DNA of 64,000 nt, taken from Phyllobates terribilis (Eukaryota). Under the pieces are notes generated by a model. It was not told the origin of the DNA. It searched no databases and saw only the letters and a program-made list of their open reading frames with translations. A program made the position numbers and the translations under genes. Of the stretch, positions 1 to 40,435 are shown one piece after another (position 1 is the stretch's first letter; each line of letters opens with the position of its first letter). Where the stretch lies: the NCBI RefSeq assembly GCF_046119375.1, contig NW_027362762.1:439022001-439086000 (forward strand). The letters are read 5' to 3'.

Positions 1-3000
1 GTGTCTCCCTGATTTTTCAGACACAAATATATCTGTTGAAAATAGTCTGGTGTAGGCCAGAGAGACAGAAGTGTGCTTTTGCTGTTCCATGGTAAAAAAT
101 CTGTATTATCCTGCTTTGTGCATTTTTTGCTGTAAAAAAAAAAAAAATAGTGTCTCCCTGATTTTTCAGACACAAATATATCTGTTGAAAATAGTCTGGT
201 GTAGGCCAGAGAGACAGAAGTGTGCTTTTGCTGTTCCATGGTAAAAAATCTCTATTATCCTGCTTTTTGCATTTTTTGCTGTTAAAAAAAAAATAGTGTC
301 TCCCTGATTTTAAAGACACAAATATATCTGTTGAAAATAGTCTGGTGTAGGCCCGAGAAATACAAGTGTGGTTTTGCAGTTCCAAGGTACAAACCTCTGT
401 ATTATCCACTTTTGGGCCATTTGTATCTAAAAAAAACTGTTTGAGTGTGTCGCTCACTGTTCAGCCGCAAATATATATATATTTTAAAAAGCCTGGTATA
501 CACCAGTAAATTATTACTGTGGTTTTGATGTTCCACGGTAAAACATCTCTATTATCCTGTTTTTGGCATTTTTTGCTGTATAAAAATAATAATAGTGTCT
601 CTCTGATTTTTCAGACACAAATATATCTGTTGAAAATAGACTGGTGTAGGCCAGAGAGACAGAAGTGTGCTTTTGCTGTTCCACGGTAAAAAATCTCTAT
701 TATCCTGCTTTTTGCATTTTTTGCTGTAAAAAAAAAAAAAAATAGTGTCTCCCTGATTTTTCAGACAAAAATATATCTGTTGAAAATAGTCTGGTGTAGG
801 CCAGAGAGACAGAAGTGTGCTTTTGCTGTTCCATGGTAAAAAATCTCTATTATCCTGCTTTTTGCATTTTTTGCTGTAAAAAAAAAAAAAAATAGTGTCT
901 CCCTGATTTTTCAGACACAAATATATCTGTTGAAAATAGTCTGGTGTAGGCCAGAGAGACAGAAGTGTGCTTTTGCTGTTCCATGGTAAAAAATCTCTAT
1001 TATCCTGCTTTTTGCATTTTTTGCTGTTAAAAAAAAAAATAGTGTCTCCCTGATTTTTCAGACACAAATATATCTGTTGAAAATAGTCTGGTGTAGGCCC
1101 GAGAAATACAAGTGTGGTTTTGCAGTTCCACGGTACAAACCTCTGTATTATCCACTTTTGGGCCATTTGTATCTAAAAAAAACAGTTTGAGTGTGTCGCT
1201 CACTGTTCAGGCGCAAATATATATATATTTTAAAAAGCCTGGTATACACCAGTAAATTATTACTGTGGTTTTGATGTTCCACGGTAAAACATCTCTATTA
1301 TCCTGCTTTTTGCATTTTTTGCTGTAAAAAAAAAAAAAAAATAGTGTCTCCCTGATTTTTCAGACACAAATATATCTGTTGAAAATAGTCTGGTGTAGGC
1401 CAGAGAGACAGAAGTGTGCTTTTGCTGTTCCACGGTAAAAAATCTCTATTATCCTGCTTTTTGCATTTTTTGCTGTAAAAAAAAAAAAAATAGTGTCTCC
1501 CTGATTTTTCAGACACAAATATATCTGTTGAAAATAGTCTGGTGTAGGCCCGAGAAATACAAGTGTGGTTTTGCAGTTCCAAGGTACAAACCTCTGTATT
1601 ATCCACTTTTGGGCCATTTGTATCTAAAAAAAACAGTTTGAGTGTGTCGCTCACTGTTCAGCCGCAAATATATATATATTTTAAAAAGCCTGGTATACAC
1701 CAGTAAATTATTACTGTGGTTTTGATGTTCCACGGTAAAACATCTCTATTATCCTGTTTTTGGCATTTTTTGCTGTATAAAAATATTAATAGTGTCTCCC
1801 TGATTTTTCAGACACAAATATATCTGTTGAAAATAGTCTGGTGTAGGCCAGAGAGACAGAAGTGTGCTTTTGCTGTTCCACGGTAAAAAATCTCTATTAT
1901 CCTGCTTTTTGCATTTTTTGCTGTAAAAAAAAAAAAAATAGTGTCTCTCTGATTTTTCAGTCACAAATATATCTGTTGAAAATAGTCTGGTGTAGGCCAG
2001 AGAGACAGAAGTGTGCTTTTGCTGTTCCACGGTAAAAAATCTCTATTATCCTGCTTTTTGCATTTTTTGCTGTAAAAAAAAAAAAAAATAGTGTCTCCCT
2101 GATTTTTCAGACACAAATATATCTGTTGAAAATAGTCTGGTGTAGGCCCGAGAAATACAAGTGTGGTTTTGCAGTTCCAAGGTACAAACCTCTGTATTAT
2201 CCACTTTTGGGCCATTTGTATCTAAAAAAAACAGTTTGAGTGTGTCGCTCACTGTTCAGCCGCAAATATATATATATTTTAAAAAGCCTGGTATACACCA
2301 GTAAATTATTACTGTGGTTTTGATGTTCCACAGTAAAACATCTCTATTATCCTGTTTTTGGCATTTTTTGCTGTATAAAAATAATAATAGTGTCTCCCTG
2401 ATTTTTCAGACACAAATATATCTGTTGAAAATAGTCTGGTGTAGGCCAGAGAGACAGAAGTGTGCTTTTGCTCTTCCACGGTAAAAAATCTCTATTATCC
2501 TGCTTTTTGCATTTTTTGCTGTAAAAAAAAAAAAAATAGTGTCTCCCTGATTTTTCAGACACAAATATATCTGTTGAAAATAGTCTGGTGTAGGCCAGAG
2601 AGACAGAAGTGTGCTTTTGCTGTTCCATGGTAAAAAATCTCTATTATCCTGCTTTTTGCATTTTTTGCTGTAAAAAAAAAAAAAAATAGTGTCTCCCTGA
2701 TTTTTCAGACACAAATATATCTGTTGAAAATAGTCTGGTGTAGGCCAGAGAGACAGAAGTGTGCTTTTGCTGTTCCATGGTAAAAAATCTCTATTATCCT
2801 GCTTTTTGCATTTTTTGCTGTTAAAAAAAAAATAGTGTCTCCCTGATTTTTCAGACAAAAATATATCTGTTGAAAATAGTCTGGTGTAGGCCAGAGAGAC
2901 AGAAGTGTGCTTTTGCTGTTCCATGGTAAAAAATCTCTATTATCCTGCTTTTTGCATTTTTTGCTGTAAAAAAAAAAAAAAATAGTGTCTCCCTGATTTT

Positions 3001-6000
3001 TCAGACACAAATATATCTGTTGAAAATAGTCTGGTGTAGGCCAGAGAGACAGAAGTGTGCTTTTGCTGTTCTATGGTAAAAAATCTCTATTATCCTGCTT
3101 TTTGCATTTTTTGCTGTTAAAAAAAAAAATAGTGTCTCCCTGATTTTTCAGACACAAATATATCTGTTGAAAATAGTCTGGTGTAGGCCCGAGAAATACA
3201 AGTGTGGTTTTGCAGTTCCACGGTACAAACCTCTGTATTATCCACTTTTGGGCCATTTGTATCTAAAAAAAACAGTTTGAGTGTGTCGCTCACTGTTCAG
3301 CCGCAAATATATATATATTTTAAAAAGCCTGGTATACACCAGTAAATTATTACTGTGGTTTTGATGTTCCACGGTAAAACATCTCTATTATCCTGCTTTT
3401 TGCATTTTTTGCTGTAAAAAAAAAAAAAAAATAGTGTCTCCCTGATTTTTCAGACACAAATATATCTGTTGAAAATAGTCTGGTGTAGGCCAGAGAGACA
3501 GAAGTGTGCTTTTGCTGTTCCACGGTAAAAAATCTCTATTATCCTGCTTTTTGCATTTTTTGCTGTAAAAAAAAAAAAAATAGTGTCTCCCTGATTTTTC
3601 AGACACAAATATATCTGTTGAAAATAGTCTGGTGTAGGCCCGAGAAATACAAGTGTGGTTTTGCAGTTCCAAGGTACAAACCTCTGTATTATCCACTTTT
3701 GGGCCATTTGTATCTAAAAAAAACAGTTTGAGTGTGTCGCTCACTGTTCAGCCGCAAATATATATATATTTTAAAAAGCCTGGTATACACCAGTAAATTA
3801 TTACTGTGGTTTTGATGTTCCACGGTAAAACATCTCTATTATCCTGTTTTTGGCATTTTTTGCTGTATAAAAATAATAATAGTGTCTCCCTGATTTTTCA
3901 GACACAAATATATCTGTTGAAAATAGTCTGGTGTAGGCCAGAGAGACAGAAGTGTGCTTTTGCTGTTCCACGGTAAAAAATCTCTATTATCCTGCTTTTT
4001 GCATTTTTTGCTGTAAAAAAAAAAAAAATAGTGTCTCCCTGATTTTTCAGACACAAATATATCTGTTGAAAATAGTCTGGTGTAGGCCAGAGAGACAGAA
4101 GTGTGCTTTTGCTGTTCCACGGTAAAAAATCTCTATTATCTTGCTTTTTGCATTTTTTGCTGTAAAAAAAAAAAAAAATAGTGTCTCCCTGATTTTTCAG
4201 ACACAAATATATCTGTTGAAAATAGTCTGGTGTAGGCCCGAGAAATACAAGTGTGGTTTTGCAGTTCCAAGGTACAAACCTCTGTATTATCCACTTTTGG
4301 GCCATTTGTATCTAAAAAAAACAGTTTGAGTGTGTCGCTCACTGTTCAGCCGCAAATATATATATATTTTAAAAAGCCTGGTATACACCAGTAAATTATT
4401 ACTGTGGTTTTGATGTTCCACAGTAAAACATCTCTATTATCCTGTTTTTGGCATTTTTTGCTGTATAAAAATAATAATAGTGTCTCCCTGATTTTTCAGA
4501 CACAAATATATCTGTTGAAAATAGTCTGGTGTAGGCCAGAGAGACAGAAGTGTGCTTTTGCTCTTCCACGGTAAAAAATCTCTATTATCCTGCTTTTTGC
4601 ATTTTTTGCTGTAAAAAAAAAAAAAATAGTGTCTCCCTGATTTTTCAGACACAAATATATCTGTTGAAAATAGTCTGCTGTAGGCCAGAGAGACAGAAGT
4701 GTGCTTTTGCTGTTCCATGGTAAAAAAATCTCTATTATCCTGCTTTTTGCATTTTTTGCTGTAAAAAAAAAAAAAAATAGTGTCTCCCTGATTTTTCAGA
4801 CACAAATATATCTGTTGAAAATAGTCTGGTGTAGGCCAGAGAGACAGAAGTGTGCTTTTGCTGTTCCATGGTAAAAAATCTCTATTATCCTGCTTTTTGC
4901 ATTTTTTGCTGTTAAAAAAAAAATAGTGTCTCCCTGATTTTTCAGACACAAATATATCTGTTGAAAATAGTCTGGTGTAGGCCCGAGAAATACAAGTGTG
5001 GTTTTGCAGTTCCAAGGTACAAACCTCTGTATTATCCACTTTTGGGCCATTTGTATCTAAAAAAAACTGTTTGAGTGTGTCGCTCACTGTTCAGCCGCAA
5101 ATATACATATATTTTAAAAAGCCTGGTATACACCAGAAAATTATTACTGTGGTTTTGATGTTCCACGGTAAAACATCTCTATTATCCTGTTTTTGGCATT
5201 TTTTGCTGTATAAAAATAATAATAGTGTCTCCCTGATTTTTCAGACACAAATATATCTGTTGAAAATAGTCTGGTGTAGGCCAGAGAGACAGAAGTGTGC
5301 TTTTGCTGTTCCACGGTAAAAAATCTCTATTATCCTGCTTTTTGCATTTTTTGCTGTAAAAAAAAAAAAAATAGTGTCTCCCTGATTTTTCAGACACAAA
5401 TATATCTGTTGAAAATAGTCTGGTGTAGGCCCGAGAAATACAAGTGTGGTTTTGCAGTTCCAAGGTACAAACCTCTGTATTATCCACTTTTGGGCCATTT
5501 GTATCTAAAAAAAACTGTTTGAGTGTGTCGCTCACTGTTCAGCCGCAAATATATATATATTTTAAAAAGCCTGGTATACACCAGTAAATTATTACTGTGG
5601 TTTTGATGTTCCACGGTAAAACATCTCTATTATCCTGTTTTTGGCATTTTTTGCTGTATAAAAATAATAATAGTGTCTCCCTGATTTTTCAGACACAAAT
5701 ATATCTGTTGAAAATAGACTGGTGTAGGCCAGAGAGACAGAAGTGTGCTTTTGCTGTTCCACGGTAAAAAATCTCTATTATCCTGCTTTTTGCATTTTTT
5801 GCTGTAAAAAAAAAAAAAATAGTGTCTCCCTGATTTTTCAGACAAAAATATATCTGTTGAAAATAGTCTGGTGTAGGCCAGAGAGACAGAAGTGTGCTTT
5901 TGCTGTTCCATGGTAAAAAATCTCTATTATCCTGCTTTTTGCATTTTTTGCTGTAAAAAAAAAAATAGTGTCTCCCTGATTTTTCAGACACAAATATATC

Positions 6001-9000
6001 TGTTGAAAATAGTCTGGTGTAGGCCCGAGAAATACAAGTGTGGTTTTGCAGTTCCACGGTACAAACCTCTGTATTATCCACTTTTGGGCCATTTGTATCT
6101 AAAAAAAACAGTTTGAGTGTGTCGCTCACTGTTCAGCCGCAAATATATATATATTTTAAAAAGCCTGGTATACACCAGTAAATTATTACTGTGGTTTTGA
6201 TGTTCCACGGTAAAACATCTCTATTATCCTGCTTTTTGCATTTTTTGCTGTAAAAAAAAAAAAAAAATAGTGTCTCCCTGATTTTTCAGACACAAATATA
6301 TCTGTTGAAAATAGTCTGGTGTAGGCCAGAGAGACAGAAGTGTGCTTTTGCTGTTCCACGGTAAAAAATCTCTATTATCCTGCTTTTTGCATTTTTTGCT
6401 GTTAAAAAAAAAAATAGTGTCTCCCTGATTTTTCAGACACAAATATATCTGTTGAAAATAGTCTGGTGTAGGCCCGAGAAATACAAGTGTGGTTTTGCAG
6501 TTCCACTGTACAAACCTCTGTATTATCCACTTTTGGGCCATTTGTATCTAAAAAAAACAGTTTGAGTGTGTCGCTCACTGTTCAGCCGCAAATATATATA
6601 TATTTTAAAAAGCCTGGTATACACCAGTAAATTATTACTGTGGTTTTCATGTTCCACGGTAAAACATCTCTATTATCCTGTTTTTTGGCATTTTTTGCGG
6701 TATAAAAATAATAATAGTGTCTCCCTGATTTTTCAGACACAAATATATCTGTTGAAAATAGTCTGGTGTAGGCCAGAGAGACAGAAGTGTGCTTTTGCTG
6801 TTCCACTGTAAAAAATCTCTATTATCCTGCTTTTTGCATTTTTTGCTGTAAAAAAAAAAAAAATAGTGTCTCCCTGATTTTTCAGACACAAATATATCTG
6901 TTGAAAATAGTCTGGTGTAGGCCAGAGAGACAGAAGTGTGCTTTTGCTGTTCCACGGTAAAAAATCTCTATTATCCTGCTTTTTGCATTTTTTGCTGTAA
7001 AAAAAAAAAAAAATAGTGTCTCCCTGATTTTTCAGACACAAATATATCTGTTGAAAATAGTCTGGTGTAGGCCCGAGAAATACAAGTGTGGTTTTGCAGT
7101 TCCAAGGTACAAACCTCTGTATTATCCACTTTTGGGCCATTTGTATCTAAAAAAAACAGTTTGAGTGTGTCGCTCACTGTTCAGCCGCAAATATATATAT
7201 ATTTTAAAAAGCCTGGTATACACCAGTAAATTATTACTGTGGTTTTGATGTTCCACGGTAAAACATCTCTATTATCCTGTTTTTGGCATTTTTTGCTGTA
7301 TAAAAATAATAATAGTGTCTCCCTGATTTTTCAGACACAAATATATCTGTTGAAAATAGTCTGGTGTAGGCCAGAGAGACAGAAGTGTGCTTTTGCTGTT
7401 CCACGGTAAAAAATCTCTATTATCCTGCTTTTTGCATTTTTTGCTGTAAAAAAAAAAAAAATAGTGTCTCCCTGATTTTTCAGACACAAATATATCTGTT
7501 GAAAATAGTCTGGTGTAGGCCAGAGAGACAGAAGTGTGCTTTTGCTGTTCCATGGTAAAAAATCTGTATTATCCTGCTTTGTGCATTTTTTGCTGTAAAA
7601 AAAAAAAAAATAGTGTCTCCCTGATTTTTCAGACACAAATATATCTGTTGAAAATAGTCTGGTGTAGGCCAGAGAGACAGAAGTGTGCTTTTGCTGTTCC
7701 ATGGTAAAAAATCTCTATTATCCTGCTTTTTGCATTTTTTGCTGTTAAAAAAAAAATAGTGTCTCCCTGATTTTAAAGACACAAATATATCTGTTGAAAA
7801 TAGTCTGGTGTAGGCCCGAGAAATACAAGTGTGGTTTTGCAGTTCCAAGGTACAAACCTCTGTATTATCCACTTTTGGGCCATTTGTATCTAAAAAAAAC
7901 TGTTTGAGTGTGTCGCTCACTGTTCAGCCGCAAATATATATATATTTTAAAAAGCCTGGTATACACCAGTAAATTATTACTGTGGTTTTGATGTTCCACG
8001 GTAAAACATCTCTATTATCCTGTTTTTGGCATTTTTTGCTGTATAAAAATAATAATAGTGTCTCTCTGATTTTTCAGACACAAATATATCTGTTGAAAAT
8101 AGACTGGTGTAGGCCAGAGAGACAGAAGTGTGCTTTTGCTGTTCCACGGTAAAAAATCTCTATTATCCTGCTTTTTGCATTTTTTGCTGTAAAAAAAAAA
8201 AAAAATAGTGTCTCCCTGATTTTTCAGACAAAAATATATCTGTTGAAAATAGTCTGGTGTAGGCCAGAGAGACAGAAGTGTGCTTTTGCTGTTCCATGGT
8301 AAAAAATCTCTATTATCCTGCTTTTTGCATTTTTTGCTGTAAAAAAAAAAAAAAATAGTGTCTCCCTGATTTTTCAGACACAAATATATCTGTTGAAAAT
8401 AGTCTGGTGTAGGCCAGAGAGACAGAAGTGTGCTTTTGCTGTTCCATGGTAAAAAATCTCTATTATCCTGCTTTTTGCATTTTTTGCTGTTAAAAAAAAA
8501 AATAGTGTCTCCCTGATTTTTCAGACACAAATATATCTGTTGAAAATAGTCTGGTGTAGGCCCGAGAAATACAAGTGTGGTTTTGCAGTTCCACGGTACA
8601 AACCTCTGTATTATCCACTTTTGGGCCATTTGTATCTAAAAAAAACAGTTTGAGTGTGTCGCTCACTGTTCAGGCGCAAATATATATATATTTTAAAAAG
8701 CCTGGTATACACCAGTAAATTATTACTGTGGTTTTGATGTTCCACGGTAAAACATCTCTATTATCCTGCTTTTTGCATTTTTTGCTGTAAAAAAAAAAAA
8801 AAAATAGTGTCTCCCTGATTTTTCAGACACAAATATATCTGTTGAAAATAGTCTGGTGTAGGCCAGAGAGACAGAAGTGTGCTTTTGCTGTTCCACGGTA
8901 AAAAATCTCTATTATCCTGCTTTTTGCATTTTTTGCTGTAAAAAAAAAAAAAATAGTGTCTCCCTGATTTTTCAGACACAAATATATCTGTTGAAAATAG

Positions 9001-12000: not shown

Positions 12001-12555
12001 AGAGAGACAGAAGTGTGCTTTTGCTCTTCCACGGTAAAAAATCTCTATTATCCTGCTTTTTGCATTTTTTGCTGTAAAAAAAAAAAAAATAGTGTCTCCC
12101 TGATTTTTCAGACACAAATATATCTGTTGAAAATAGTCTGCTGTAGGCCAGAGAGACAGAAGTGTGCTTTTGCTGTTCCATGGTAAAAAAATCTCTATTA
12201 TCCTGCTTTTTGCATTTTTTGCTGTAAAAAAAAAAAAAAATAGTGTCTCCCTGATTTTTCAGACACAAATATATCTGTTGAAAATAGTCTGGTGTAGGCC
12301 AGAGAGACAGAAGTGTGCTTTTGCTGTTCCATGGTAAAAAATCTCTATTATCCTGCTTTTTGCATTTTTTGCTGTTAAAAAAAAAATAGTGTCTCCCTGA
12401 TTTTTCAGACACAAATATATCTGTTGAAAATAGTCTGGTGTAGGCCCGAGAAATACAAGTGTGGTTTTGCAGTTCCAAGGTACAAACCTCTGTATTATCC
12501 ACTTTTGGGCCATTTGTATCTAAAAAAAACTGTTTGAGTGTGTCGCTCACTGTTC
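1..12555. repeat. 7,463-bp higher-order duplication (50 monomers): 1-~5090 repeated at 7464-~12555
   Basis: Every ORF in the track from 17..457 to 4437..5087 reappears with identical length and translation at +7463. Rare variants are shared (CTTTGTGC, TTTTAAAGACAC, CAGGCGC, CAGTCAC, GTTCTATGG, GTCTGCTGTAGG). Confidence 0.93.
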
Positions 12556-21600: not shown

Positions 21601-21658
21601 TCTTTATTACCCTTTTTCCATTGATAGTGCAAGTGTAAGCTATTTTACTTCATTTACA

Positions 21659-22738: not shown

Positions 22739-23160
22739 TGTTACAACTCTCCTGTTAGGTTTTTTTTAGTTTGCTGGTCACATGACCAGTTTTGCCTATT
22801 TAATCCGGCTCCGCCCTCCTGGCATTGCTGGACTTCATTGTATTTACTACTGTTGAGCTAGCTTGGTGCTCTGTTGCCGTTCTCTGTTAGTTTTGCTAGG
22901 TCTTCTGACCTCTATGCTTTTTGTTGTGTGTTTGTCTTTGACTGCTACTATTTCTGCTAGGGGGTGTCCAACTTATCCCAGTCCCTAGATCTTGTAGGGA
23001 TCCCTCCCTCACATCTATAGGTCTTCGTACAGACTAGCCTAGGACTTTAGCGGGTCTGATTGCAGGATCAGGTTCCCCGTTACATCGTAGGGATCTAGTT
23101 TAGTTCTATTGTAGGGACAGATCTCCTGTCTTTCCTTAGTCTCTGTAGCAGATCATAACA
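22739..23160 (+). repeat. 5' LTR of Gypsy-1
   Basis: TGTTACAACT...GATCATAACA, with TATA-like TATTTAA at 22797-22803. Confidence 0.97.
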
Positions 23161-23162
23161 GT

Positions 23163-23171
23163 AAGTCCAGC
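23163..23171 (+). promoter_or_regulatory. Self-priming primer-binding site (AAGTCCAGC), complementary to LTR 22827-22835
   Basis: Exact 9-nt reverse complement of GCTGGACTT, which lies 30 bp downstream of the LTR TATA-like box. Confidence 0.7.
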
Positions 23172-23224
23172 CTTAAAAAAAAAAAAAAAAAATTTCTCTA
23201 AGGAAAGACCTTCAGTTTTCCATC

Positions 23225-26200
23225 ATGGTCTCGGTGCAAGATTTGGCTCAACGCTTGCAGGGACTCTCTCTGGAGGTGGCCAAGCTCCAACAACACGTGA
23301 GTAGCTGTTCTGGAGCGCATTTTGTGGAACCAAAGGTACGTCTGCCTGATCTATTTTTTGGCGAACAACAAGATTTTTTTTCTTTTAAAAATGCTTGTCT
23401 ATTATATTTTCGTTTGAGACCCGGATCCTCTGGTGATGAATCACAGCGCATAGGGTTCATAATGTCACATTTGCGCAAAGATCCTCAGGGATGGGCCTTC
23501 TCTGTCCAACCTAGTGATCCGTGCTTTAGATCAGTGGATAGTTTTTTTTCTGCTTTGGGTTTATTGTACGATGATCCTGATCGTGTCTCATCTGCTGAGT
23601 CTGAATTAAGACGTTTGAGGCAGGGATCAGGTAATGTGGAAAAATATTGTTCTCACTTCCGTCGGTGGTCTGCCCAGGTGGGGTGGAACGATTCAGCTTT
23701 GAAAAGCTTGTTTCTTGCAGGGCTAGGTGAAAGGGTTAAGGATTTACTGATTGCTTATCCCACACCTGGAAACTTGCAGGAGGCAATGCAATTAGCTATA
23801 CGGGTGGACAGGAGACTGCGTGCAAGGGTTAATGAGAGAAAATCCTCTGCTATGTCAGCTTCGAGTCCTGAGAGGTTCAGTGCTGACAATGGTGAGCCAA
23901 TGGAAATTGGGGCTATGGCACCCCGTTCTCAGGAAAAAGACCGCCGACTTTCTGAAGGCTTGTGTTTCTATTGCGGAAATTCTGGTCATTTTATTAAGAG
24001 CTGTGTGCTTCGTATGAAGAAAGAAAAAAAAATGGTCAGTCATGCCCGTATTGCCTGTTTAAATTCTAAGGGAGTATTCCTATCTGCCACTACTGCTGCT
24101 CAGGATGAGTTAATTGAATTTCGGGTATTTGTGGATTGTGGATCTACTCTAAATGTGATTGATGGGAGATTCTTGGAAAAACTTAAATTAGAACCTAAAA
24201 CTTTGTCATCCCCTATTGCTGTGGTTTCTGTCGATGGCTCTCCCTTGAAGAGTGTTACTCACAAGGTCTGTGAATTTCCCCTCACTATTAATGGTATTCA
24301 TCAAGAGAATTTGGATTTGGTGGTATTGGATAATTTGCCTTCTCCTGTAATATTGGGGTTACCCTGGTTAAAATTGCACAATCCTGTACTGGATTGGTCT
24401 ACCAATGAAATTAAGTCCTGCAGCCCTAAGTGTTATGACAAGTGTTGTAACGGGCGCATTGCTGCTGTGGATAGAGGGGAATTGCCTGTACCTATTCAGG
24501 ATTTTTGGAGAGTTTTTTCTGAGGAGGAGTCGCAGGTTTTGCCTCCCCATAGAGACTATGATTGTACCATTGAATTTGTCCCTGGAGTGACTCTTCCTAA
24601 GAGTCGTTTATTTAATCTTACTATTCCTGAGAGAAAGGCTTTGGAGGAATACATACAGACAAGCTTGGCCGCTGGTCACATTAGGCCTTCCAAGTCTCCT
24701 GTGGCTGTTGGATTTTTTTTTGTAAAAAAAAAAGATGGCGGTTTACGTCCTTGTCTGGACTTTTGTGAGATTAATAAAATTACTGTACGCAATCCTTACC
24801 CACTGCCATTGATTCCTGATTTATTTAACCAGTTAGTGGGGGCCAAGTGGTTCTCTAAAATTGATCTCCGGGGGGCATACAATTTGTTGCGCATGAAGGA
24901 GGGTGATGAATGGAAGACTGCTTTTAACACTCCTGTGGGTCATTTTGAGAATCTGGTTATGCATTTTGGTCTCACCAATGCTACAGCATTTTTTCAGAAT
25001 CTTATTAATGATATCCTTAGACCTTTAATCGGCAAAAATGTGGTTGTGTATTTGGATGACATTTTGATTTATTCGCCTGATCTGGAGTCTCATTGGCGGA
25101 GCGTACGTGAGGTATTACAGTTATTAATGGACAATTCGCTTTTTGCTAAGCTGGAGAAATGTGAGTTCGCTGTACAGAGAATTAGTTTTTTGGGCTACAT
25201 TATCTCCAGTGAAGGTTTTGAGATGGACCCGGTTAAAGTTCAAGCTGTGCAGGAATGGCCTAGGCCTATTGGTTTGAAATCGATACAGAGGTTTTTGGGT
25301 TTCGCCAATTATTACAGAAAATTCATAAAAAAAATTTCTATTATTATCAAACCGCTGACCGATCTCACCAGGAAAGGTGCTAATACGGTTCAGTGGACTT
25401 CTGAGGCCATTGAAGCTTTTGTGTTTTTAAAGGAGAGGTTCACCTCTGCTCCCATCCTTATGCAGCCTGATGTGACTAAGCCGTTTTTGGTTGAGGTTGA
25501 TGCTTCTTCGGTGGGGGTTGGTGCGGTGTTGTCTCAGGAAAACAAGGATGGAGTACATCCCTGTGCCTTTTTTTCAAAAAAATTTTCCGAGACTGAACTT
25601 AATTACGATATTGGTAATCGGGAATTGCTGGCGATTAAACTCGCATTTGAACACTGGCGTCACCTCTTGGAAGGTGCAGATTTTGACATTCAGGTTTTCA
25701 CTGATCATAAAAATCTGATCTATCTTGATGCTGCCAAGCGCTTGAATGCCCGTCAGGCTAGGTGGTCACTTTTTTTCTCGCGGTTTAATTTTTCCGTTAC
25801 TTACATCCCGGGTACCAAGAATGTTAAAGCGGATGCTTTGTCTCGCAGCTTTTCTCCCATGGTCGGTGTTGAGGAGGAAGAGGAGACCATTTTACAAGAA
25901 GGTGTTGTGATTGCTGCTTTGGACTCCGTTTTGGAGGATGAGATTCTTAAAGCACAGGAGAATGCCCCATCTAACACTCCCCATGGGAGGTTGTTTGTGC
26001 CTAGGACCTTTAGGAGAGATTTGTTTGTTGAGTGTCATGAGTCTCGGTTGGCAGGTCATCCAGGAATTTTTGAGACCAAGAGACTTGTGGGTCGCAGTTT
26101 TTGGTGGCCTGGATGGCAGAAGGAAGTCATTAAGTGGGTGCGCCAATGTACTGTGTGTGCTAGATCCAAGTCTTCGCATGCTCCTGCTGCGGGGTTGCTT

Positions 26201-27295
26201 TGCCCTCTGGAGGTTCCTAGTGCACCTTGGACACATTTGGCTATGGACTTTATTACTGACCTTCCTCCCTCTGAAGGTTTCACGGTCATCTGGGTGGTCG
26301 TGGACCGTTTTAGCAAGATGTGTCACTTGGTTCCCTTCATCAAACTGCCTTGCGCTAAGACACTCGCTAAGGCCTTTGTCAAGGAGATTGTCAGACTACA
26401 TGGTGTTCCTACTGACATTGTTTCTGATAGGGGACCTCAGTTCGTGGCTCGTTTTTGGCGTGCCTTTTGTGACAGGTTGGGAGTCCATTTGTCGTTTTCA
26501 TCCGGATATCATCCTGAGTCTAATGGCCAGACAGAAAGGAAGAACCAGGATGTTGAGCAGTTCTTGTGTTGTTTTGTGGCAGACAATCAAGAGGGGTGGT
26601 CTGAGTTTCTGCCACTTGCTGAATTTGCTCTTAACAACCATACATCCTCTTCTGCTGGGTGTTCGCCTTTTTTTTGTTGTTCTGGGAGACATCCGTCTTT
26701 TGGGTCATTCTCCAAATTGGTTTCGGCTGTGCCTGAGGAGGAGAGTTTTTCCGGTGATTTGGAGAGAGTTTGGACAGATGTGCGTGGTAATCTTCAGGAG
26801 GCTAACAAAAAATCTAAGAGGTACTTTGATAGGAAACGGCAAGAGGTTTTGTTTGCTGTTGGTGACATGGTTTGGTTGTCCTCTAAGAATCTGCGATTGA
26901 GGATTCCTTCTAAAAAATTGGGTTCCAAATTCGTAGGGCCCTTTAAGGTGCTTCAGATAGTTAACCAATCTGCTGTTAGGCTGGAGGTTCCTACGTCCTG
27001 GAGGATTAATCCGGTGTTTCATGTTTCTCTGTTGAAAAAAGCTGATGTGTCGGATGGTGACGCCTCTGCCACTGTTCTTCCGGTGGTGGAGGACGGGGAA
27101 TATGAAATTTCCCGCATCCTAAATTCTAGACGGTATAGAGGGAGTTTGCAGTATCTCGTCGCTTGGAAGGGTTTCGGACCTGAGGATAACTCATGGGTGA
27201 GGGCGGATGATGTTTCTGCTTCCAGACTTGTCCGAGCGTTTCACAGGAGGTTTCCTGGTAAGCCTGGGCCTAGGGGATCCGGAGGATCCTCTTAG
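23225..27295 (+). CDS. Gag-Pol polyprotein, 1356 aa (gag, CCHC knuckle, protease, RT, RNase H, integrase, chromodomain)
   Basis: CFYCGNSGHFIKSC; VFVDCGSTLN; YLDDILIY; VEVDASSVGVGAVL; HESRLAGHPG...CTVC; AMDFIT / SDRGPQF / GQTERKNQ; YEISRILNSR...YLVAWKGFGPEDNSWV. Confidence 0.97.
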   Translation: MVSVQDLAQRLQGLSLEVAKLQQHVSSCSGAHFVEPKVRLPDLFFGEQQDFFSFKNACLLYFRLRPGSSGDESQRIGFIMSHLRKDPQGWAFSVQPSDPCFRSVDSFFSALGLLYDDPDRVSSAESELRRLRQGSGNVEKYCSHFRRWSAQVGWNDSALKSLFLAGLGERVKDLLIAYPTPGNLQEAMQLAIRVDRRLRARVNERKSSAMSASSPERFSADNGEPMEIGAMAPRSQEKDRRLSEGLCFYCGNSGHFIKSCVLRMKKEKKMVSHARIACLNSKGVFLSATTAAQDELIEFRVFVDCGSTLNVIDGRFLEKLKLEPKTLSSPIAVVSVDGSPLKSVTHKVCEFPLTINGIHQENLDLVVLDNLPSPVILGLPWLKLHNPVLDWSTNEIKSCSPKCYDKCCNGRIAAVDRGELPVPIQDFWRVFSEEESQVLPPHRDYDCTIEFVPGVTLPKSRLFNLTIPERKALEEYIQTSLAAGHIRPSKSPVAVGFFFVKKKDGGLRPCLDFCEINKITVRNPYPLPLIPDLFNQLVGAKWFSKIDLRGAYNLLRMKEGDEWKTAFNTPVGHFENLVMHFGLTNATAFFQNLINDILRPLIGKNVVVYLDDILIYSPDLESHWRSVREVLQLLMDNSLFAKLEKCEFAVQRISFLGYIISSEGFEMDPVKVQAVQEWPRPIGLKSIQRFLGFANYYRKFIKKISIIIKPLTDLTRKGANTVQWTSEAIEAFVFLKERFTSAPILMQPDVTKPFLVEVDASSVGVGAVLSQENKDGVHPCAFFSKKFSETELNYDIGNRELLAIKLAFEHWRHLLEGADFDIQVFTDHKNLIYLDAAKRLNARQARWSLFFSRFNFSVTYIPGTKNVKADALSRSFSPMVGVEEEEETILQEGVVIAALDSVLEDEILKAQENAPSNTPHGRLFVPRTFRRDLFVECHESRLAGHPGIFETKRLVGRSFWWPGWQKEVIKWVRQCTVCARSKSSHAPAAGLLCPLEVPSAPWTHLAMDFITDLPPSEGFTVIWVVVDRFSKMCHLVPFIKLPCAKTLAKAFVKEIVRLHGVPTDIVSDRGPQFVARFWRAFCDRLGVHLSFSSGYHPESNGQTERKNQDVEQFLCCFVADNQEGWSEFLPLAEFALNNHTSSSAGCSPFFCCSGRHPSFGSFSKLVSAVPEEESFSGDLERVWTDVRGNLQEANKKSKRYFDRKRQEVLFAVGDMVWLSSKNLRLRIPSKKLGSKFVGPFKVLQIVNQSAVRLEVPTSWRINPVFHVSLLKKADVSDGDASATVLPVVEDGEYEISRILNSRRYRGSLQYLVAWKGFGPEDNSWVRADDVSASRLVRAFHRRFPGKPGPRGSGGSS

Positions 27296-27307
27296 AAGAG
27301 GGGGTAC

Positions 27308-27729
27308 TGTTACAACTCTCCTGTTAGGTTTTTTTTAGCTTGCTGGTCACATGACCAGTTTTGCCTATTTAATCCGGCTCCGCCCTCCTGGCATTGCTGG
27401 ACTTCATTGTATTTACTACTGTTGAGCTAGCTTGGTGCTCTGTTGCCGTTCTCTGTTAGTTTTGCTAGGTCTTCTGACCTTTATGCTTTTTGTTGTGTGT
27501 TTGTCTTTGACTGCTACTATTTCTGCTAGGGGGTGTCCAACTTATCCCAGTCCCTAGATCTTGTAGGGATCCCTCCCTCACATCTATAGGTCTTCGTACA
27601 GACTAGCCTAGGACTTTAGCGGGTCTGATCGCAGGATCAGGTTCCCCGTTACATCGTAGGGATCTAGTTTAGTTCTATTGTAGGGACAGATCTCCTGTCT
27701 TTCCTTAGTCTCTGTAGCAGATCATAACA
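27308..27729 (+). repeat. 3' LTR of Gypsy-1
   Basis: Direct repeat of 22739-23160 immediately after the PPT. Confidence 0.97.
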
Positions 27730-29994
27730 CCCTCGTCTCAGTCTTCACTTGTTATGGCAGTTTCTCAAGAAACAGCATCAACGTCCACGTCCACGTCCCA
27801 CCGCAGCGTTCAATTGTCCATATCCCAGACCTTTGAACGAAAGCGGAAATTCGCAGCTAACGCCCCACAGGCCACAGTCCTAAATTCGCACATTTCACGA
27901 CTGCTTGCATTGGAAATGCTGCCTTTTAGGCTGGTGGAGACGGAATCCTTCCGCAACCTTATGGCGGTGGCCGTCCCTCGGTACTCGGTCCCCAGCCGAC
28001 ACTATTTTGCCCGGTGTGCCATCCCCGCACTACACAAGCACGTGTCCCAAAGCATCTGCCGTGCCCTCAACAACGCAGTTACTGGGAGAGTCCACCTGAC
28101 AACGGACACGTGGACAAGTGCTTGTGGCCAGGGACGGTACATCTCTCTGACGGCACACTGGGTAAACATAGTGGAAGCCGGGACCCAGTCGGACCTTGGG
28201 ACGGAACACATCCTCCCCACACCAAGGATTGCGGGCCCTATGTCAGTCAGAGTTGCCCCCACAGTGTACAGCTCCTGCGCATCCTCCTCCTCCTCCTCAT
28301 GTTCAGCCTCCATCTCAGATATCACCACATCAGTTACAAGCTGGAAGCATTGCAGTACTGCCTCTGCCAAGCGGCAACAGGCTGTGCTGAAACTCATAAG
28401 CTTAGGTGATAAACCTCTCACTGCTTGTGAGTTGTGGACAGCTGTGAAAGAGCAGGCAGATCTGTGGCTGAGACTGCTGAACCTACATCCCGGCATGGTC
28501 GTGTGTGACAATGGCCGTAACCTGGTGGCGGCTCTGAGGCGAGGTGAGATCACACACGTACCATGCCTGGCTCATGTGCTTAACTTCGTGGTTCAGCGGT
28601 TTCTTAAATCGTAACCCGAGTTGCCAGATCTGCTCGTGAAAGTACGCCGCCTGTCAGCTCATTTTCACAAGTCGGCTACAGCTTCCGCCGCCCTTGCTGT
28701 GTTGCAGCAGCATTTGCAGCTTCCGGCACACCGACTGGTTTGTGATGTCCCCACACGTTGGAACTCTACCCTCCACATGTTGCAAAGGATTTGTGAGCAG
28801 AAGAGAGCAGTTGTGGAATACCAGCTGCAACAAGGCCGTCGATATTCAGGTCAGACTCCACACATAAGACCTCAGGAGTGGACCTGGATGTCTGACATAT
28901 GTACCATCCTGACAAATTTTGAGGAGCCCACCAAGATGGTGAGTGGCGATGACGCCAACATTAGTGTCAGCATCCCACTTGTCTGTCTTTTGCAACGCTC
29001 TCTGCAGAGAATTAAAGAGGAGGCATTGCAGCCAGAGTATGATGAGATGGATCAAGAAGCCGTAGCGGGCGATTACACACAGCCCAGCCTCATCTCATCC
29101 CAACGTGCATTGGGGGACAATGAGGGAGAGGAGGAGGAGGAGGAAGAACAGGAGCTGCTATCATGCGTTGTAGACGGTAGTACCTGTACAAGTGTCATAC
29201 CGTCGGTTCAGCGTGGGTGGCCTGAGGACAGGGGGGAGGAGGAAGAGGAGGAGGAGGAGAGCATGGTCAGTCATCATCTTGGTGAGGACACGGAAATCTT
29301 GCCCGTTACGAGTCTGGCACGCATGGCTGACTTTATGTTACGCTGCCTTAACCGTGACCCTCGCGTTGTCAAAATGTTGGGTGACAGTCATTACTGGTTG
29401 GTGACACTTGTAGACCCCCACTACAAGGAGAACTTTCACTCTCTTATTCCTGAGGTGGAGAGGTCTACAAAAATGGGGCAATACCAGAAGGCCCTTGCTG
29501 CAGAACTCTTAAAAAAATTCCCATCTGAACACGCTAGCGGCAGAGGTCACAGTTCATTGCCCAACCAAGGCGTACAGGCGAGAGAGATGCAACTCCAATC
29601 CAGCAGAGGCAGGGGAACACTGTCAACGTTCTGGGACAGTTTTCTGACACCCGCCCAGCTTACAGGCCCTGAGGCGCGGGGTACTCTCACAAGGAGTGGA
29701 AAGTTTCAAAAGATGGTGAGGGAGTACCTTGCCGATCGTACCAGCATCCTCCGTGATTCCTCTGTGCCTTTTAATTATTGGGTATCCAAGCTGGACACTT
29801 GGAATGAACTCGCTCTGTACGCCTTGGAGGTCCTGGCCTGCCCTGCCGCTAGCGTGTTATCGGAGCGTGTTTTTGGTGCCGCTGGGGGAATTATAACTGA
29901 TAAGCACACTCGCCTGTCAACTGACAATGCTGACAAGCTGACCCTTATCAAAATGAACAAGGATTGGGCCAGACTTCTCATCACCACCAAATGA
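27730..29994 (+). pseudogene. hAT transposase catalytic core and C-terminal dimerisation domain; one in-frame stop at 28612-28614
   Basis: Motifs HLTTDTWTS (D), MVVCDNGRNL (D), CLAHVLN (CxxH), DVPTRWNST, and ACPAASVLSERVF (E, hATC). KS*PELPDLL is in frame, consistent with TAC>TAA. Confidence 0.93.
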
Positions 29995-30156
29995 CAGCAG
30001 AGTAACATAAAGTCAAATCCACTGTGTTATTTCGGGAGGTGTATTCACATGCACCGCTTCACACCCACACATGGGTATACTCTTCCTCGTTTCGGCTGTT
30101 TAATCTTCTTCTCCTTATCCTCAGCCTCCACCACCACTATACCACCAGGGTGCCAG

Positions 30157-30540
30157 CATTGCAATTGCTCCGTCCTAATTTTTGGCAGCTTTTGCTGGGA
30201 AAGCATAAGCAAATACTATGGGAGACCCACTCCCCAATAATGGGACTTATGTTTGTAATATGCTGTACTGCATGGCTCTTGTAAGGGGCATTGCAAGTTG
30301 CTCCGTCCTAATTTTTGGCAGCTTTTGCTGGGAAAGCATAAGCAAATACTATGGGAGACCCACTCCCCAATAATGGGACTTATGTTTGTAATATGCTGTA
30401 CTGCATGGCTCTTGTAAGGGGCATTGCAAGTTGCTCCGTCCTAATTTTTGGCAGCTTTTGCTTGCAAGGCATAAGCAAATACTATGGGACACCCACTCCC
30501 CAATAATGGGACTTATGTTTGTAATATGCTGTACTGCATG
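30157..30540. repeat. Three tandem 133-bp units in the hAT 3' region; the third is interrupted by a solo LTR and resumes at 31566
   Basis: GCTCCGTCCTAATTTTTGGCAGC at 30167, 30300 and 30433. Confidence 0.9.
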
Positions 30541-31565
30541 TGACGCGCCCCCTGGGCCGTGTGTACACGTGTGTGGGATACCTGGTGCCGGGTCTCTGGG
30601 GTCTGTAGTCTCCGTGGCGGTAACCCGGTCCCGTGGCTCAGGCAGGTCAAACCAGTGGCAATCTTTCTTAGGTTTTGAGGTTAATTGTCCGACTGCGCCA
30701 CCCGTGGATTGCGGTCAGGGAGTACCACCGCTGCGAGGCAGAGCGCTGAGGCTGGTGTTGTGTGCGCAACATAAAATGGGATAACTCCCCTCGGGAGGAG
30801 TATAGCCTCAGGGCAGTGAGTGTGGATGATGGGGGTGATGATACACGAGCGCCGCAGGAATGACTCAGAGTCTTTGCAGTGCAGTTCAGGGTCTTTACTG
30901 ATGATTATAAGGTAGACCCTCCCGGGAGTACTGGCTAGCATAAGAGGCCTGGTCAGTCTGTGAGCAAGCAGGAGTTCCCCTGGCCAGGTGGAGTTGTAGG
31001 CCTCCCCGTCTGTCTGCACTCTTCCTGGCTACCTTGCTGTAAGCGGGTAGAAGTAGCCCACGTCCCTGAGTGTACCGTGTAGTGCTCACCCGTATGGCTG
31101 GTGACTTGGGGCCTTCTGTTAGCCTCCGCTCCACGACGGCGGTGCTGGTCCCTTGCTTATGACTGAGCCTCCGGGCTTCTATGGCCAGAGGACCTGAAAT
31201 CCCCTGCTGGCTGGTTTCTTCTGCTGGATATATAAGTCCTCACAGCTTCGGACTCCTGTGTCCGGTTCATATTGTCTTCTGCCAGGGCGAGCTCTGCTCA
31301 GCTTCCAGCACCTCGTCTTTAGCTCCTAGCTCCTACAGTGCTCCTTGCTGTTACTTTCCCTTGCTCTCACTCTGACTCTGACTGTTCTCTGTTCTCTGAC
31401 TCACTCAACCCCACCCCAGATCCAGTTTATAAGGGCAGAATTCTCCCCTCCCAGGACTGGGGCAGGAGGATGTTGCATGTTTAAGGGATCCTGACCAGGA
31501 AACCTCCCACTTGCTCTCCGACGTAATCTCTATTACTGTGGTGACCAGACCCCTGGGGTGCCACA
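30541..31565 (-). mobile_element. Solo LTR (~1.0 kb)
   Basis: Inverted termini (TG)TGACGCGCCCCCTGGG ... CCCTGGGGTGCCACA, with CATG on both flanks (30537-30540 and 31566-31569). A minus-strand TATA (CCCTTATAAACTGG) and AGTAAA signal suggest orientation. No coding sequence. Confidence 0.75.
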
Positions 31566-31699
31566 CATGGCTCTTGTAAGGGGCATTGCAGTACCTCATA
31601 ATTTTTGGAAAGCCTTCCATTCACTGCTTAGGCCAACAGTGCACAGGAGACCCAGTTGCTATAAATGGAAAAAAAGGTTTAGTTAACGCCCTCTGGCCT

Positions 31700-33440
31700 C
31701 CATGTCATTTCCAAGGGGCATTGGAGTGCCTCGAAATTTTTGGTAGGCATTGCACTCACTGTATGCCATATAACTGTGTAGCCGAACCGCTCCTTTTGTT
31801 ACAGAAACATATCCTACAAGACATATCTGGTTGACTGGCCTGATATTGATGTGAATGGTCCCTGTTCCTCCTGCTCTTTCTCCTTTGCCACTACCTCATC
31901 CATCATTTATCACCTGAAGCTTTGTTTTAACGGGAGTCATAGAACTTGGATAGTAGCAGGAAAACATCCAGCAATCCTCGGAGGAGGTAGGATATGCGCC
32001 AAAACGCTGACCTCCTCAGGCCTAGCCGCTACTACATACATGCGCTTGCATTACAACAAAACAAAGCAGATGCTAACTTCTATCATCCTCATCATGCTTC
32101 TCACCTTGGCACTCTCAACTCCCCTGATGGAGAAGCCAGGGCCCACCGGAGGAGTCTGATAGTCCGGTGGGCTCGGCCAATGCTGCCCTAAAGCAGGCCA
32201 GGCTAAGAAAAGTGTGGGAAAGGTTACCGGTACAAATAGGGGTGGCTGGGGACCGAGTATGGACACCCAGCCACCCCCTGGAGGCTGGGGAGCAAGCGGG
32301 GACACCCGGGGACTGAGTATGGATACCAGGCCGCCGACACAGCCATGGCGTGGTGGCCAGATTCCGCCTCCACATGCCTAAAAGGCCCAATTTAAAGTGC
32401 AAGCAAGCAGTATGGTATTGCAGCCTGGGAGTGGGTGGGTGGCAGGCTGCATACTTGCGCTTGCATTGCAAGGAATGGGAGAGGTACAATTGAACACTGC
32501 CCTGGGACAAGGACTTGAATGGGGATAGTTGCAAGTCTGCAACGACAGGTGCAAGGTGGGAGGCATCTTCGCATGTATCATGAACAGGGGTTTGGCATGC
32601 ACACACTACAGCGGAATAGGCTCTCCTTCCCACTAAATGCACTGGGGAGGGCACAGGTAATGTTTTGGTATATGCGCTTAATGTTATGTATAAGGCACAC
32701 CAGGACAAATAGGGGCGGCTGGGGACTGAGTATGAATACCTCGCTGCCGAAGCAGCCATGAGGTAGTGACCAGCTTCGGCCTCCTCTAAACTAAAAGGCC
32801 CCATTTCAAGTGCAAGCTAGCAGTATGGAATTGCAGTCTGGGGGTGGGTGGGTGGCAGGCTGCACACTTACACTTGCATTAAAAGAAAACATAGCAGATG
32901 CTAACTTCTGTCATCATCATCATGCTCCTCACCTTGGCACTCTCAACTCCACCGATGGAGAAGTCAGGGCCCACCGGAGGAGTCTGGTTCTCTGGTGGGC
33001 TCGTCCAATGCTGCCTAAAGCAGGCCGGGCTAAGAAAAGTGTTTGGGGGGATGTTCCAAGGAGAAATGGGGGCGGCTGGGGACCGTTTATGGACACCCGA
33101 CTGCCCCCAGGCGGCTGGGGACCGTGTGGACACTCGGCCGCGGGGCGGCTGGGGACTGAGTATGGACACCCGGCCGCCGGGCGGCTGGGGACTGAGTATG
33201 GATTCCAGGCCGCCAACACAGCCATGACGTGGTGGCCAGATTCCCCCTCCACATGCCTAAAAGGCCCAATTTCAAGTTCAAGCAAGCAAGCAGTACGGTA
33301 TTGCAGCCTGGGGGTGGGTGGGTGGCAGGCTGCATACTTGCGCTTGTATTGCAAGGAATGGGGGAGGTACAATTGAACACTGCCCTGGGACTAGAACTAG
33401 CATGGGGATAGTTGCAAGTCTGCATCTTCTGATGCGGCAA
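31700..33440 (-). pseudogene. Antisense, degenerate, partly tandem-repeated fragments of hAT transposase coding sequence
   Basis: Minus-strand translations SVQLYLSHSLQCKRKYAA, GPFRHVEGESGHHVMAV..YSVPSR, AVVCACQTPVHDTCEDAS and HILPPPRIAG match the sense transposase SVQLSISQTFERKRKFAA, LPFRLVETESFRNLMAV..YSVPSR, PVVCARQSPVHTACKDAPS and HILPTPRIAG. Confidence 0.85.
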
Positions 33441-33959
33441 GGATCACTTATGATGGGCACACTTTTAGACAGTGACCTGGGAGTCAGAGATGCTTCCAGG
33501 GGTCTTCCCCATGCTGTTCCCATGTCTTTTCAGCACTTTATGCATGTGTCACACAGCACATGGCCAGATAAGGTTGTAAAATGTTAAAATGACATTTCCC
33601 GGTGAATGCATTTGTCATAGTTGAAAGCAATACAAAAATGCAAAAACACATAAAAAATGCTACTTGTGAACATAGCCGAAGGTGTGGAGGAGTATTTTTG
33701 TTTTTGGTCATTTATTTTAACTTATACACAAGTCTTTTCCCTGGAAAGGATGCTCCTTAACATATTTCACAGGAAAAAAGTTTCACTTTCGTTTTATTGT
33801 GAGCCTGTAAAAGTGGCTTAATACCTCTGACCACATTGTTGACAGCAGTGACCTGGGGGTCAGAAATGCTTCCTGGGGTGATCCCCATGCTGTCCCCATG
33901 TCATTTGAGCACTGTCACTATCGTTTTGGGCACTTGTTAGGCTTTCAAAAGACTGCCGG

Positions 33960-34094
33960 GGGTGCCACGGCAAAAATGCTCGAGTCTCCCATAGACTAAC
34001 ATTGGGCTCGTTGCTCGGGTCGAGCACCCGAGTATCACGGCGAGCTCGGCCCGAGCTTCGAGCACCCGAGCATTTTAGTGCTCACTCAACACTA
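33960..34094 (+). repeat. hAT right subterminal repeats and TIR
   Basis: Dense GCTCG/CGAGC/CCCGAG motifs ending in CTCAACACTA. Confidence 0.8.

Positions 34095-40336: not shown

Positions 40337-40435
<99 letters not shown>

What the first reader, a model, noticed from the sequence alone, without database searches (positions are those of the whole stretch)
1..34094. A >21-kb higher-order satellite apparently grown inside a giant hAT transposon
Seen: the satellite runs without interruption to ~60 bp before the transposase ATG (21659). A hAT right TIR closes the element at 34094, and no left TIR lies between the array and the ATG. Known: hAT elements need both TIRs and make 8-bp TSDs, and TE-internal repeats can seed satellites. 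Inference: the left TIR is upstream of position 1, so the element is >34 kb and its internal ~149-bp repeat has expanded in place. This would be a snapshot of satellite birth, or a transposon that carries satellite arrays as cargo.
Basis: partly seen in the sequence, partly recalled or inferred. Interest (0 to 1): 0.85.

Follow-up and report, generated by a model that had tools for sequence, protein, structure and literature searches.

The report
Satellite array inside a frog hAT transposon
A poison-frog-type hAT transposon family has ~149-bp tandem repeats directly in front of its transposase gene, and in this dead copy they form a satellite of more than 21 kb; this is a clear but not unprecedented case of a transposon seeding satellite DNA.

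Summary
An uninterrupted, single-orientation array of 143 monomers of ~149 bp fills 1 to about 21620. Monomer homology fades about 38 bp before the ATG at 21659 of a BED/hAT transposase. A hAT-like terminus ends at 34094, and no matching left terminus lies in the window.

The main new evidence comes from public-run contigs laid across the junction. They show a very abundant hAT family. More than 100 distinct contigs cover the last monomer, the leader and the ATG, and depth does not drop there. So the repeat is a built-in part of the family's 5' region, not a truncation at this locus.

The array shows edge decay towards the ATG: identity to the core consensus falls from 99% to 83-87% to 69%. 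It also carries a 5.5-kb internal duplication at 99.8% identity, so it was growing recently.

The copy itself is dead. It has a +1 frameshift, a nonsense codon and a nested young Ty3/gypsy element (22739-27729), which accounts for 5 kb of the "giant" size.

The left TIR and the TSD lie outside the window. "One element of more than 34 kb" is therefore plausible (about 55%) but unproven. Two unchecked earlier notes of this scan describe similar satellite-bearing hATs elsewhere in this genome.

This is a new member of a known kind (transposon-borne satellite) and of moderate interest.

The parts
1..21228 (+). Homogenised core of the satellite. It has three ~149-150-bp monomer types: A (73 copies), B (35, including the decayed one at 21373) and C (33). 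They sit in variable units B-C-A(n), n=1-5, with higher layers of 2,090 and 7,463 bp. The core runs off the left edge of the window.
   Evidence: within-type identity 96.5-98.5%; A/B 74%, A/C 80%, B/C 66%; 1-5472 equals 7464-12935 at 99.78% without gaps.
21229..21620 (+). Decayed, hAT-proximal monomers: C-like at 21229-21372 (83% to core C), B-like at 21373-21521 (87% to core B), and a partial C-like one from 21522 (69%). They alternate with a ~291-bp period.
   Evidence: (D12-D17); 21340-21527 is matched with one difference by contigs of two other organisms and at high depth in organism A.
21621..21658 (+). Short non-repeat leader between the last monomer and the start codon. It holds no TIR.
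   Evidence: depth here (2.3-2.4 million) equals that of the ORF. Variants at 21631 and 21652 are carried by about 70-100 contigs each.
21659..22738 (+). hAT transposase, 5' part: an acidic N-terminal region and the BED zinc finger. An 8-T run at 22462-22469 gives a +1 frameshift.
   Evidence: zf-BED, E=7e-7; 21% of family depth has one T fewer, which restores ...VWNFFKDSAD...
22739..27729 (+). Nested Ty3/gypsy chromovirus-type LTR retrotransposon. The LTRs are 422 bp with 3 differences. It has an intact 1356-aa gag-pol ORF and a 5-bp TSD, CCCTC.
   Evidence: (D6). In one search, loose ends at 22738 read straight on into the uninterrupted hAT in all four runs.
27735..29994 (+). hAT transposase, 3' part: the catalytic region and the C-terminal hAT dimerisation domain. 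A TAA at 28612-28614 replaces a Tyr codon.
   Evidence: Dimer_Tnp_hAT, E=2e-8; frog hAT transposases match at 60-93%; 93% identity to a Phyllobates terribilis protein that has Y at the stop.
29995..34094 (+). Long 3' non-coding part of the element. It holds a 133-bp x2.9 tandem (30156-30540) and a tandem of ~413-466-bp units (32032-33424) that are antisense copies of a transposase fragment. It ends in a subterminal region with CGAGCACCCGAG twice and the terminus ...CTCAACACTA.
34095..34102 (.). The 8 bp flanking the right terminus (AGAAGTAC). This is the predicted target-site duplication; its partner is not in the window.
   Evidence: Not testable here.

Best explanation
This is a dead copy of a very abundant hAT transposon family of dendrobatid-type frogs. 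In this family the stretch directly upstream of the transposase start codon is made of ~149-bp tandem monomers. At this locus that internal repeat has grown into an array of more than 21.6 kb, most likely by unequal exchange between misaligned monomers and blocks of monomers. The exchange homogenised the core into A/B/C higher-order units and left older, decayed monomers at the fixed edge next to the ATG. A Ty3/gypsy element later landed in the BED-finger region. Shown: the array and its layers, the family-wide junction from monomer to ATG, and the breaks in the gene. Inferred: growth in place, and a left TIR at the far end of the array.
For: The array is uninterrupted and in one orientation. 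Identity to the core consensus falls from 99% to 83-87% to 69% towards the ATG. A 5,472-bp block is repeated at 99.78%, and a 2,090-bp layer at 98.8%. Across the junction, 80-95 thousand contigs per run lie on 2 kb. Depth at 21604-21669 matches the ORF. More than 100 contigs carry variants at 21602, 21631 and 21652 well away from their ends, and one listed contig spans 21575-21687. As a control, loose ends at 22738 recover the hAT without the gypsy insertion. hAT identity is supported. The hAT 5' stretch is held by six organisms. The core array is listed only for three: A and E, which are among the six, and H.
Against: No left TIR or TSD was seen, because the array runs off the window. Contigs from elsewhere in the genome show the proximal monomer types in tandem, and also A-like and core-B-like sequence (joints and loose ends). 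Long arrays could therefore exist independently and have recombined with this copy. Summed contig depth is not a copy number. The right terminus was not checked against other copies.
Confidence: 0.58

Rival explanations
1. The monomers belong to the hAT family, but the long array does not belong to this element. Ectopic or unequal recombination between the few monomers of this copy and a separate large array, or the monomers of another hAT copy, fused the two. The far end of the array then has no matching left TIR.
For: Contigs from elsewhere in the genome show the proximal monomer types in tandem and hybrid junctions between monomer types (tables 5c and 7). Small runs and RNA-type runs hold about half of the core-array words, which suggests many copies. 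The change from 99% core monomers to decayed ones is abrupt, at 21228/21229.
Against: The monomer orientation and the B-C alternation continue in register across the transition. In-place expansion needs fewer events. Unchecked notes of this scan report another hAT with a left end, then a 16.6-kb satellite, then the transposase.
Confidence: 0.25
2. Satellite as cargo: the element already carried a long array when it transposed here, so giant satellite-laden hATs are themselves mobile.
For: All three monomer types turn up in contigs from other places in the genome, and some lead into the final leader monomer (loose ends at 21409 and 21566). Notes of this scan list other giant hATs in the genome (unchecked).
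Against: The 99.78% 5.5-kb duplication is younger than the copy's other damage, which points to growth after insertion. No evidence here shows that any hAT of more than 30 kb has moved.
Confidence: 0.1
3. A 5'-truncated hAT fragment that merely lies beside, or inserted into, an unrelated satellite.
For: No left TIR lies between the array and the ATG. The copy is degraded.
Against: The same junction from monomer through leader to ATG occurs in more than 100 distinct contigs, at the depth of the ORF, in two samples.
Confidence: 0.04
4. Assembly artefact: the length of the array, or its join to the hAT, is a mis-assembly of collapsed or expanded repeats.
For: A near-perfect 5.5-kb internal duplication is the kind of structure assemblers can create.
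Against: The junction itself is independently present in short-read-derived contigs of several runs. The array has a coherent multi-layer structure with a graded edge.
Confidence: 0.03

Closest known systems
Central tandem repeats of Helentron/DINE-1-type elements (Drosophila DINE-1; Crassostrea gigas CgHINE) that expand into satellite arrays
   Same: Tandem repeats are a built-in internal part of a DNA transposon. The element spreads them around the genome, and they expand locally into satellite-like arrays (review PMC9659126, read).
   Different: Those carriers are non-autonomous rolling-circle elements. Here the carrier is a hAT that encodes its transposase, the repeats abut the start codon, and the array exceeds 21 kb with higher-order structure.
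MITE-derived frog satellites: Xstir (Xenopus laevis) and miDNA4 (X. tropicalis)
   Same: An anuran satellite whose monomer comes from a class II element (PMC9659126).
   Different: Those derive from short non-autonomous MITEs. This monomer has no Rfam match and no significant similarity to the element's own right end.
Tetris foldback transposon of Drosophila virilis, and TE tandem dimers as satellite seeds (from my own knowledge and the reference list of PMC9659126)
   Same: Internal TE repeats act as building blocks of an emerging satellite and expand by unequal exchange.
   Different: A different superfamily and host. Here many family copies show the repeat next to an ORF.
Canonical hAT elements (Ac, hobo, Hermes, Tol2)
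   Same: A BED finger, the hAT dimerisation domain and a TAG-type terminus with short subterminal repeats.
   Different: Canonical elements are about 3-5 kb. This one is at least 7.4 kb from the ATG to the end even without the array and the gypsy element. TIR pairing and the 8-bp TSD are unverified.

Membership tests
hAT superfamily DNA transposon | Transposase with the hAT C-terminal dimerisation domain | tested here: met
   PF05699, E=1.8e-8, on 28621-29991. Frog hAT transposase homologues match down to E=1e-135.
hAT superfamily DNA transposon | N-terminal BED-type zinc finger (common, not universal) | tested here: met
   PF02892, E=7e-7, in the frame 22305-22736.
hAT superfamily DNA transposon | Pair of short terminal inverted repeats | tested here: inconclusive
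   Only the right terminus (34059-34094) is present. No inverted partner exists in the window with up to 3 mismatches. The left end would lie beyond position 1.
hAT superfamily DNA transposon | 8-bp target-site duplication | not testable with these tools
   The right flank is AGAAGTAC. The left flank is outside the window, and two metagenome scans found no other copy.
Satellite DNA with higher-order repeats | Long head-to-tail array of one monomer family | tested here: met
   143 monomers over more than 21.6 kb, on one strand, with no interruption.
Satellite DNA with higher-order repeats | Monomer subtypes in a repeating higher-order pattern, more alike between units than within them | tested here: met
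   A, B and C types are 66-80% alike to each other but 96.5-98.5% alike within a type. Units are B-C-A(n), with layers of 2,090 bp (98.8%) and 7,463 bp (99.78%). Unit length varies, so this is not a strict 448-bp higher-order repeat.
Transposon-borne satellite (repeat internal to the TE family) | The same monomers occupy the same position in many independent copies of the TE | tested here: met
   More than 100 distinct contigs cover the junction from monomer through leader to ATG, at ORF-level depth, in two samples of organism A.
Transposon-borne satellite (repeat internal to the TE family) | The array lies between the two ends of one element | tested here: inconclusive
   The right end is present and the left end is not in the window.
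Ty3/gypsy chromovirus (the nested element) | LTR pair, TSD, gag-PR-RT-RNaseH-IN order and a C-terminal chromodomain | tested here: met
   The LTRs are 422 bp and 99.3% identical, and the TSD is CCCTC. The Pfam domains occur in that order and include PF00385.

The most novel reading that the evidence does not exclude
An autonomous, very high-copy hAT family acts as a genome-wide distributor of satellite seeds. Every insertion plants a few ~149-bp monomers that sit against the transposase start codon and may carry its promoter. Individual insertions then inflate into arrays of tens of kb while still bounded by both TIRs. The result would be transposons of more than 30 kb, and a large share of this frog's satellite DNA would trace back to one transposon's 5' leader.
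Probability: 0.3. Interest if true: 0.7.

Novelty: new member of a known kind. Interest (0 to 1): 0.45.

Why it matters
Satellites born from transposon-internal repeats are an accepted route. The documented carriers are mostly non-autonomous elements such as MITEs and Helentrons (PMC9659126). This case gives an autonomous-type hAT of a large frog genome, with the seed (a few decayed monomers in front of the ATG, shared by the whole family) and the product (an array of more than 21 kb that was still duplicating recently) in one contiguous sequence. If a family census confirms it, the birth rate of arrays per insertion becomes measurable. It would also help explain how giant anuran genomes gain both dispersed and tandem repeats from a single source.

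Tried and rejected
1. I tried to fetch other copies through proteins. Close homologues exist in Phyllobates terribilis, Ranitomeya and Dendrobates, but no DNA was served: the sample files are too large or the gene range too long. The window's own ORF pieces are not on record.

2. Exact-pattern scans of metagenome contigs for the terminus and for the first 26 nt of the ORF found nothing.

3. I looked for similarity between the monomers and the element's right subterminal region, as a possible shared transposase-binding motif. It is not significant: the best local scores fall within the shuffle range for most comparisons, at most 1-3 of 200 shuffles reach the two best scores, and nothing convincing emerged.

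4. I tested for an RNA-gene origin of the monomer (5S, tRNA or snRNA, as in some frog satellites). No Rfam match came near its threshold.

5. I searched for monomers or further ends of this hAT elsewhere in the window and found none.

6. Searching the scan's earlier notes by sequence gave nothing.

7. The reading as a strict 448-bp trimer was rejected. The unit length varies with the number of A monomers.
Full report
**What is in the sequence**

The window has no N and splits at about 21.6 kb. The left part is AT-rich (34% GC), and the right part is 38-53% GC and rich in transposons.

Tandem Repeats Finder reports one array from 1 to 21167, with periods of 149 and 448 bp, and a looser 150-bp continuation to 21589. 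I chained a conserved 10-mer anchor and obtained 143 consecutive monomers spaced 140-158 bp. The single 299-bp gap is a mutated anchor. All monomers lie on the + strand, and none occurs elsewhere in the window.

Clustering gives three monomer types:
- A has 73 copies, B has 35 (including the decayed one at 21373) and C has 33.
- Identity within a type is 96.5-98.5%.
- Identity between types is 66-80%.

The types are arranged as B-C-A(n) with n from 1 to 5. The "448-bp" higher-order repeat is therefore only the commonest of several unit lengths.

Two further layers exist. A 2,090-bp repeat is 98.8% identical. A 7,463-bp repeat has 1-5472 equal to 7464-12935 at 99.78% without a gap.

**The edge next to the gene**

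Identity to the core consensus is 98-99% up to 21228. It then falls to 83% (C-like, 21229-21372), 87% (B-like, 21373-21521) and 69% (partial C-like from 21522). Recognisable homology ends near 21620. Only about 38 bp separate the repeat from the ATG at 21659. This graded decay at a fixed boundary is the usual mark of an array edge that escapes homogenisation. That reading rests on established knowledge of satellite dynamics and is an inference here.

**The transposon**

The ORF pieces 21659-22471, 22305-22736 (in another frame), 27754-28614 and 28621-29994 together make a BED-finger hAT transposase. The evidence is zf-BED at E=7e-7 and Dimer_Tnp_hAT at E=2e-8. The best homologues are all frog hAT transposases. 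One Phyllobates terribilis protein is 93% identical to the middle piece. The host is therefore a dendrobatid-type frog.

The copy is dead in three ways:
- An 8-T run at 22462-22469 shifts the frame by +1.
- A TAA at 28612-28614 replaces a Tyr codon.
- A Ty3/gypsy chromovirus sits at 22739-27729. Its LTRs are 422 bp with 3 differences, its gag-pol ORF of 1356 aa is intact, and its TSD is CCCTC.

Without that insertion, the distance from the ATG to the end is 7,440 bp.

The 4.1 kb after the stop codon holds a 133-bp x2.9 tandem. It also holds a tandem of ~413-466-bp units that are antisense copies of transposase nucleotides 22681-22738 plus 27735-28087. These units were therefore copied from a hAT without the gypsy insertion.

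The element ends at 34094. Read inwards, the terminus is TAGTGTTGAG..., and the 12-mer CGAGCACCCGAG occurs twice only in the last 75 bp. The 36-nt terminus has no inverted partner anywhere in the window.

**Is the repeat part of the transposon or only a neighbour?**

This was the key question, and the window alone cannot answer it. I laid the Logan contigs of four public runs on 21340-23300 at 90% likeness or better.

In two samples of the window's species, 80-95 thousand contigs matched. The family is therefore extremely abundant and diverse: 24% of the contigs are at least 99% alike, 42% are 95-99% alike and 35% are 90-95% alike.

Summed depth does not fall at the junction. It is 2.3-2.4 million at 21604-21669, against about 1.5-4.4 million along the ORF. 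It is 4-12 million over the proximal monomers.

Variants at 21602, 21631 and 21652 are each carried by about 70-107 distinct contigs, 29-57 nt from the contig ends. One listed contig spans 21575-21687.

As an internal control, loose ends at 22738 in all four runs read on into the uninterrupted transposase. The method therefore does detect alternative junctions where they exist. No comparable alternative junction appears upstream of the ATG among the best-supported rows, but 693 rows were not shown.

Two other organisms hold 21340-21527 with a single difference.

I conclude that the ~149-bp monomers directly upstream of the ATG are a built-in feature of this hAT family. The rival reading, a truncated hAT beside an unrelated satellite, is essentially excluded.

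**What else the reads say**

Contigs also show proximal-type monomers in tandem elsewhere (the back-joints with about 30 inserted letters). Some switch from the proximal B-like monomer into core-B sequence (loose end at 21409). In others the last monomer before the leader has an A-like left half (loose end at 21566). All three monomer types therefore occur elsewhere in the genome, and this array is not the sole birthplace of the satellite.

About 21% of family depth has a 7-T run, which restores the reading frame.

The word index finds the hAT 5' stretch in six coded organisms. The core array is listed only for three of the coded organisms (A and E, which are among the six, and H). It is held at about 0.5 share in small runs and in runs guessed to be RNA. 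This is weak evidence that the core variants are younger or narrower in distribution than the hAT, and that monomer sequence is transcribed.

**What remains unproven**

The left TIR and the TSD are outside the window. Every route to other copies failed:
- No exact-product records exist for the window's ORF pieces.
- The metagenome scans found nothing.
- Only one read-laying run was allowed.

Two unchecked first-reader notes from other pieces of this genome describe a hAT with a 16.6-kb satellite between its left end and its transposase (s1-196784), and one with a 110-bp satellite in the same position (s1-224837). Others describe hATs of about 11 kb with antisense modules in all three copies of one window (s1-241531, s1-209078). 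I treat these as leads only, since I could not see their sequences. If they concern the same family, they favour in-place expansion between intact ends.

**Mechanism and odds**

Most likely (about 0.58), the repeat expanded in place after insertion, by unequal exchange, with the left end beyond position 1. The alternatives are:
- Fusion with a separate array by recombination (about 0.25).
- Transposition of an already satellite-laden giant element (about 0.10).
- Truncation next to an unrelated satellite (about 0.04).
- Mis-assembly (about 0.03).

**Comparison with what is known**

Reviews list transposon-internal repeats as a recognised source of satellites. The carriers named are mainly non-autonomous ones: MITEs, including the frog satellites Xstir and miDNA4, and Helentron/DINE-1 central tandem repeats (PMC9659126). 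I found no paper on dendrobatid satellites linked to hAT. This case works like the Helentron central-repeat model, but in a transposase-encoding hAT. I file it as a new member of a known kind.

Noticed in passing
window 32032-33424: A tandem of about 3 units (413-466 bp). Each is an antisense copy, 66-79% identical, of transposase nucleotides 22681-22738 plus 27735-28087, so it was copied from a hAT without the gypsy insertion. Other notes of the scan call this a family-wide 'antisense module'. It could feed antisense or small RNAs against the transposase.
   Followed up: partly
window 22739-27729: A young Ty3/gypsy chromovirus with an intact 1356-aa gag-pol ORF, 422-bp LTRs with 3 differences and the TSD CCCTC. 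It is nested in the BED-finger region of the hAT, and other family copies lack it (loose ends at 22738).
   Followed up: yes
window 1-12935: A 5,472-bp block of the array is repeated 7,463 bp further on at 99.78% identity without gaps. This is either a very recent segmental duplication within the satellite or an assembly duplication.
   Followed up: partly
window 22462-22469: A homopolymer of 8 T causes the frameshift. About 21% of the family's contig depth has 7 T (frame intact) and about 13% has 6 T. The frameshifted form is therefore the commonest in the genome, which hints that a non-autonomous lineage did much of the amplification.
   Followed up: partly
window 10000-11500 (core array): Runs guessed to be RNA from the same organism hold 47-51% of the sampled array words. 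Monomer sequence may therefore be transcribed, or the libraries may carry DNA.
   Followed up: no
window 30156-30540: A 133-bp unit repeated 2.9 times at 98% identity in the hAT 3' region. This is a second, much smaller internal tandem repeat in the same element.
   Followed up: no
window 34648-41114: Another element bounded by inverted repeats (arms at about 34648-35335 and 40816-41114). It holds a nested LTR-type element, with direct repeats at 35639-35782 and 39792-39936 and a gag-like ORF from 35830.
   Followed up: no
window 50803-52295 and 57238-58842: Two C-rich minisatellites, with periods of 34 bp (46 copies) and 30 bp (53 copies).
   Followed up: no
runs X9 and X10 laid on window 21340-23300: Many loose ends carry the same palindromic linker-like string (…GGTTCGTCCATCGATCGATGGACGAACC…). 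It looks like a library construct, not genome sequence, so junction evidence from these two runs should be discounted.
   Followed up: no
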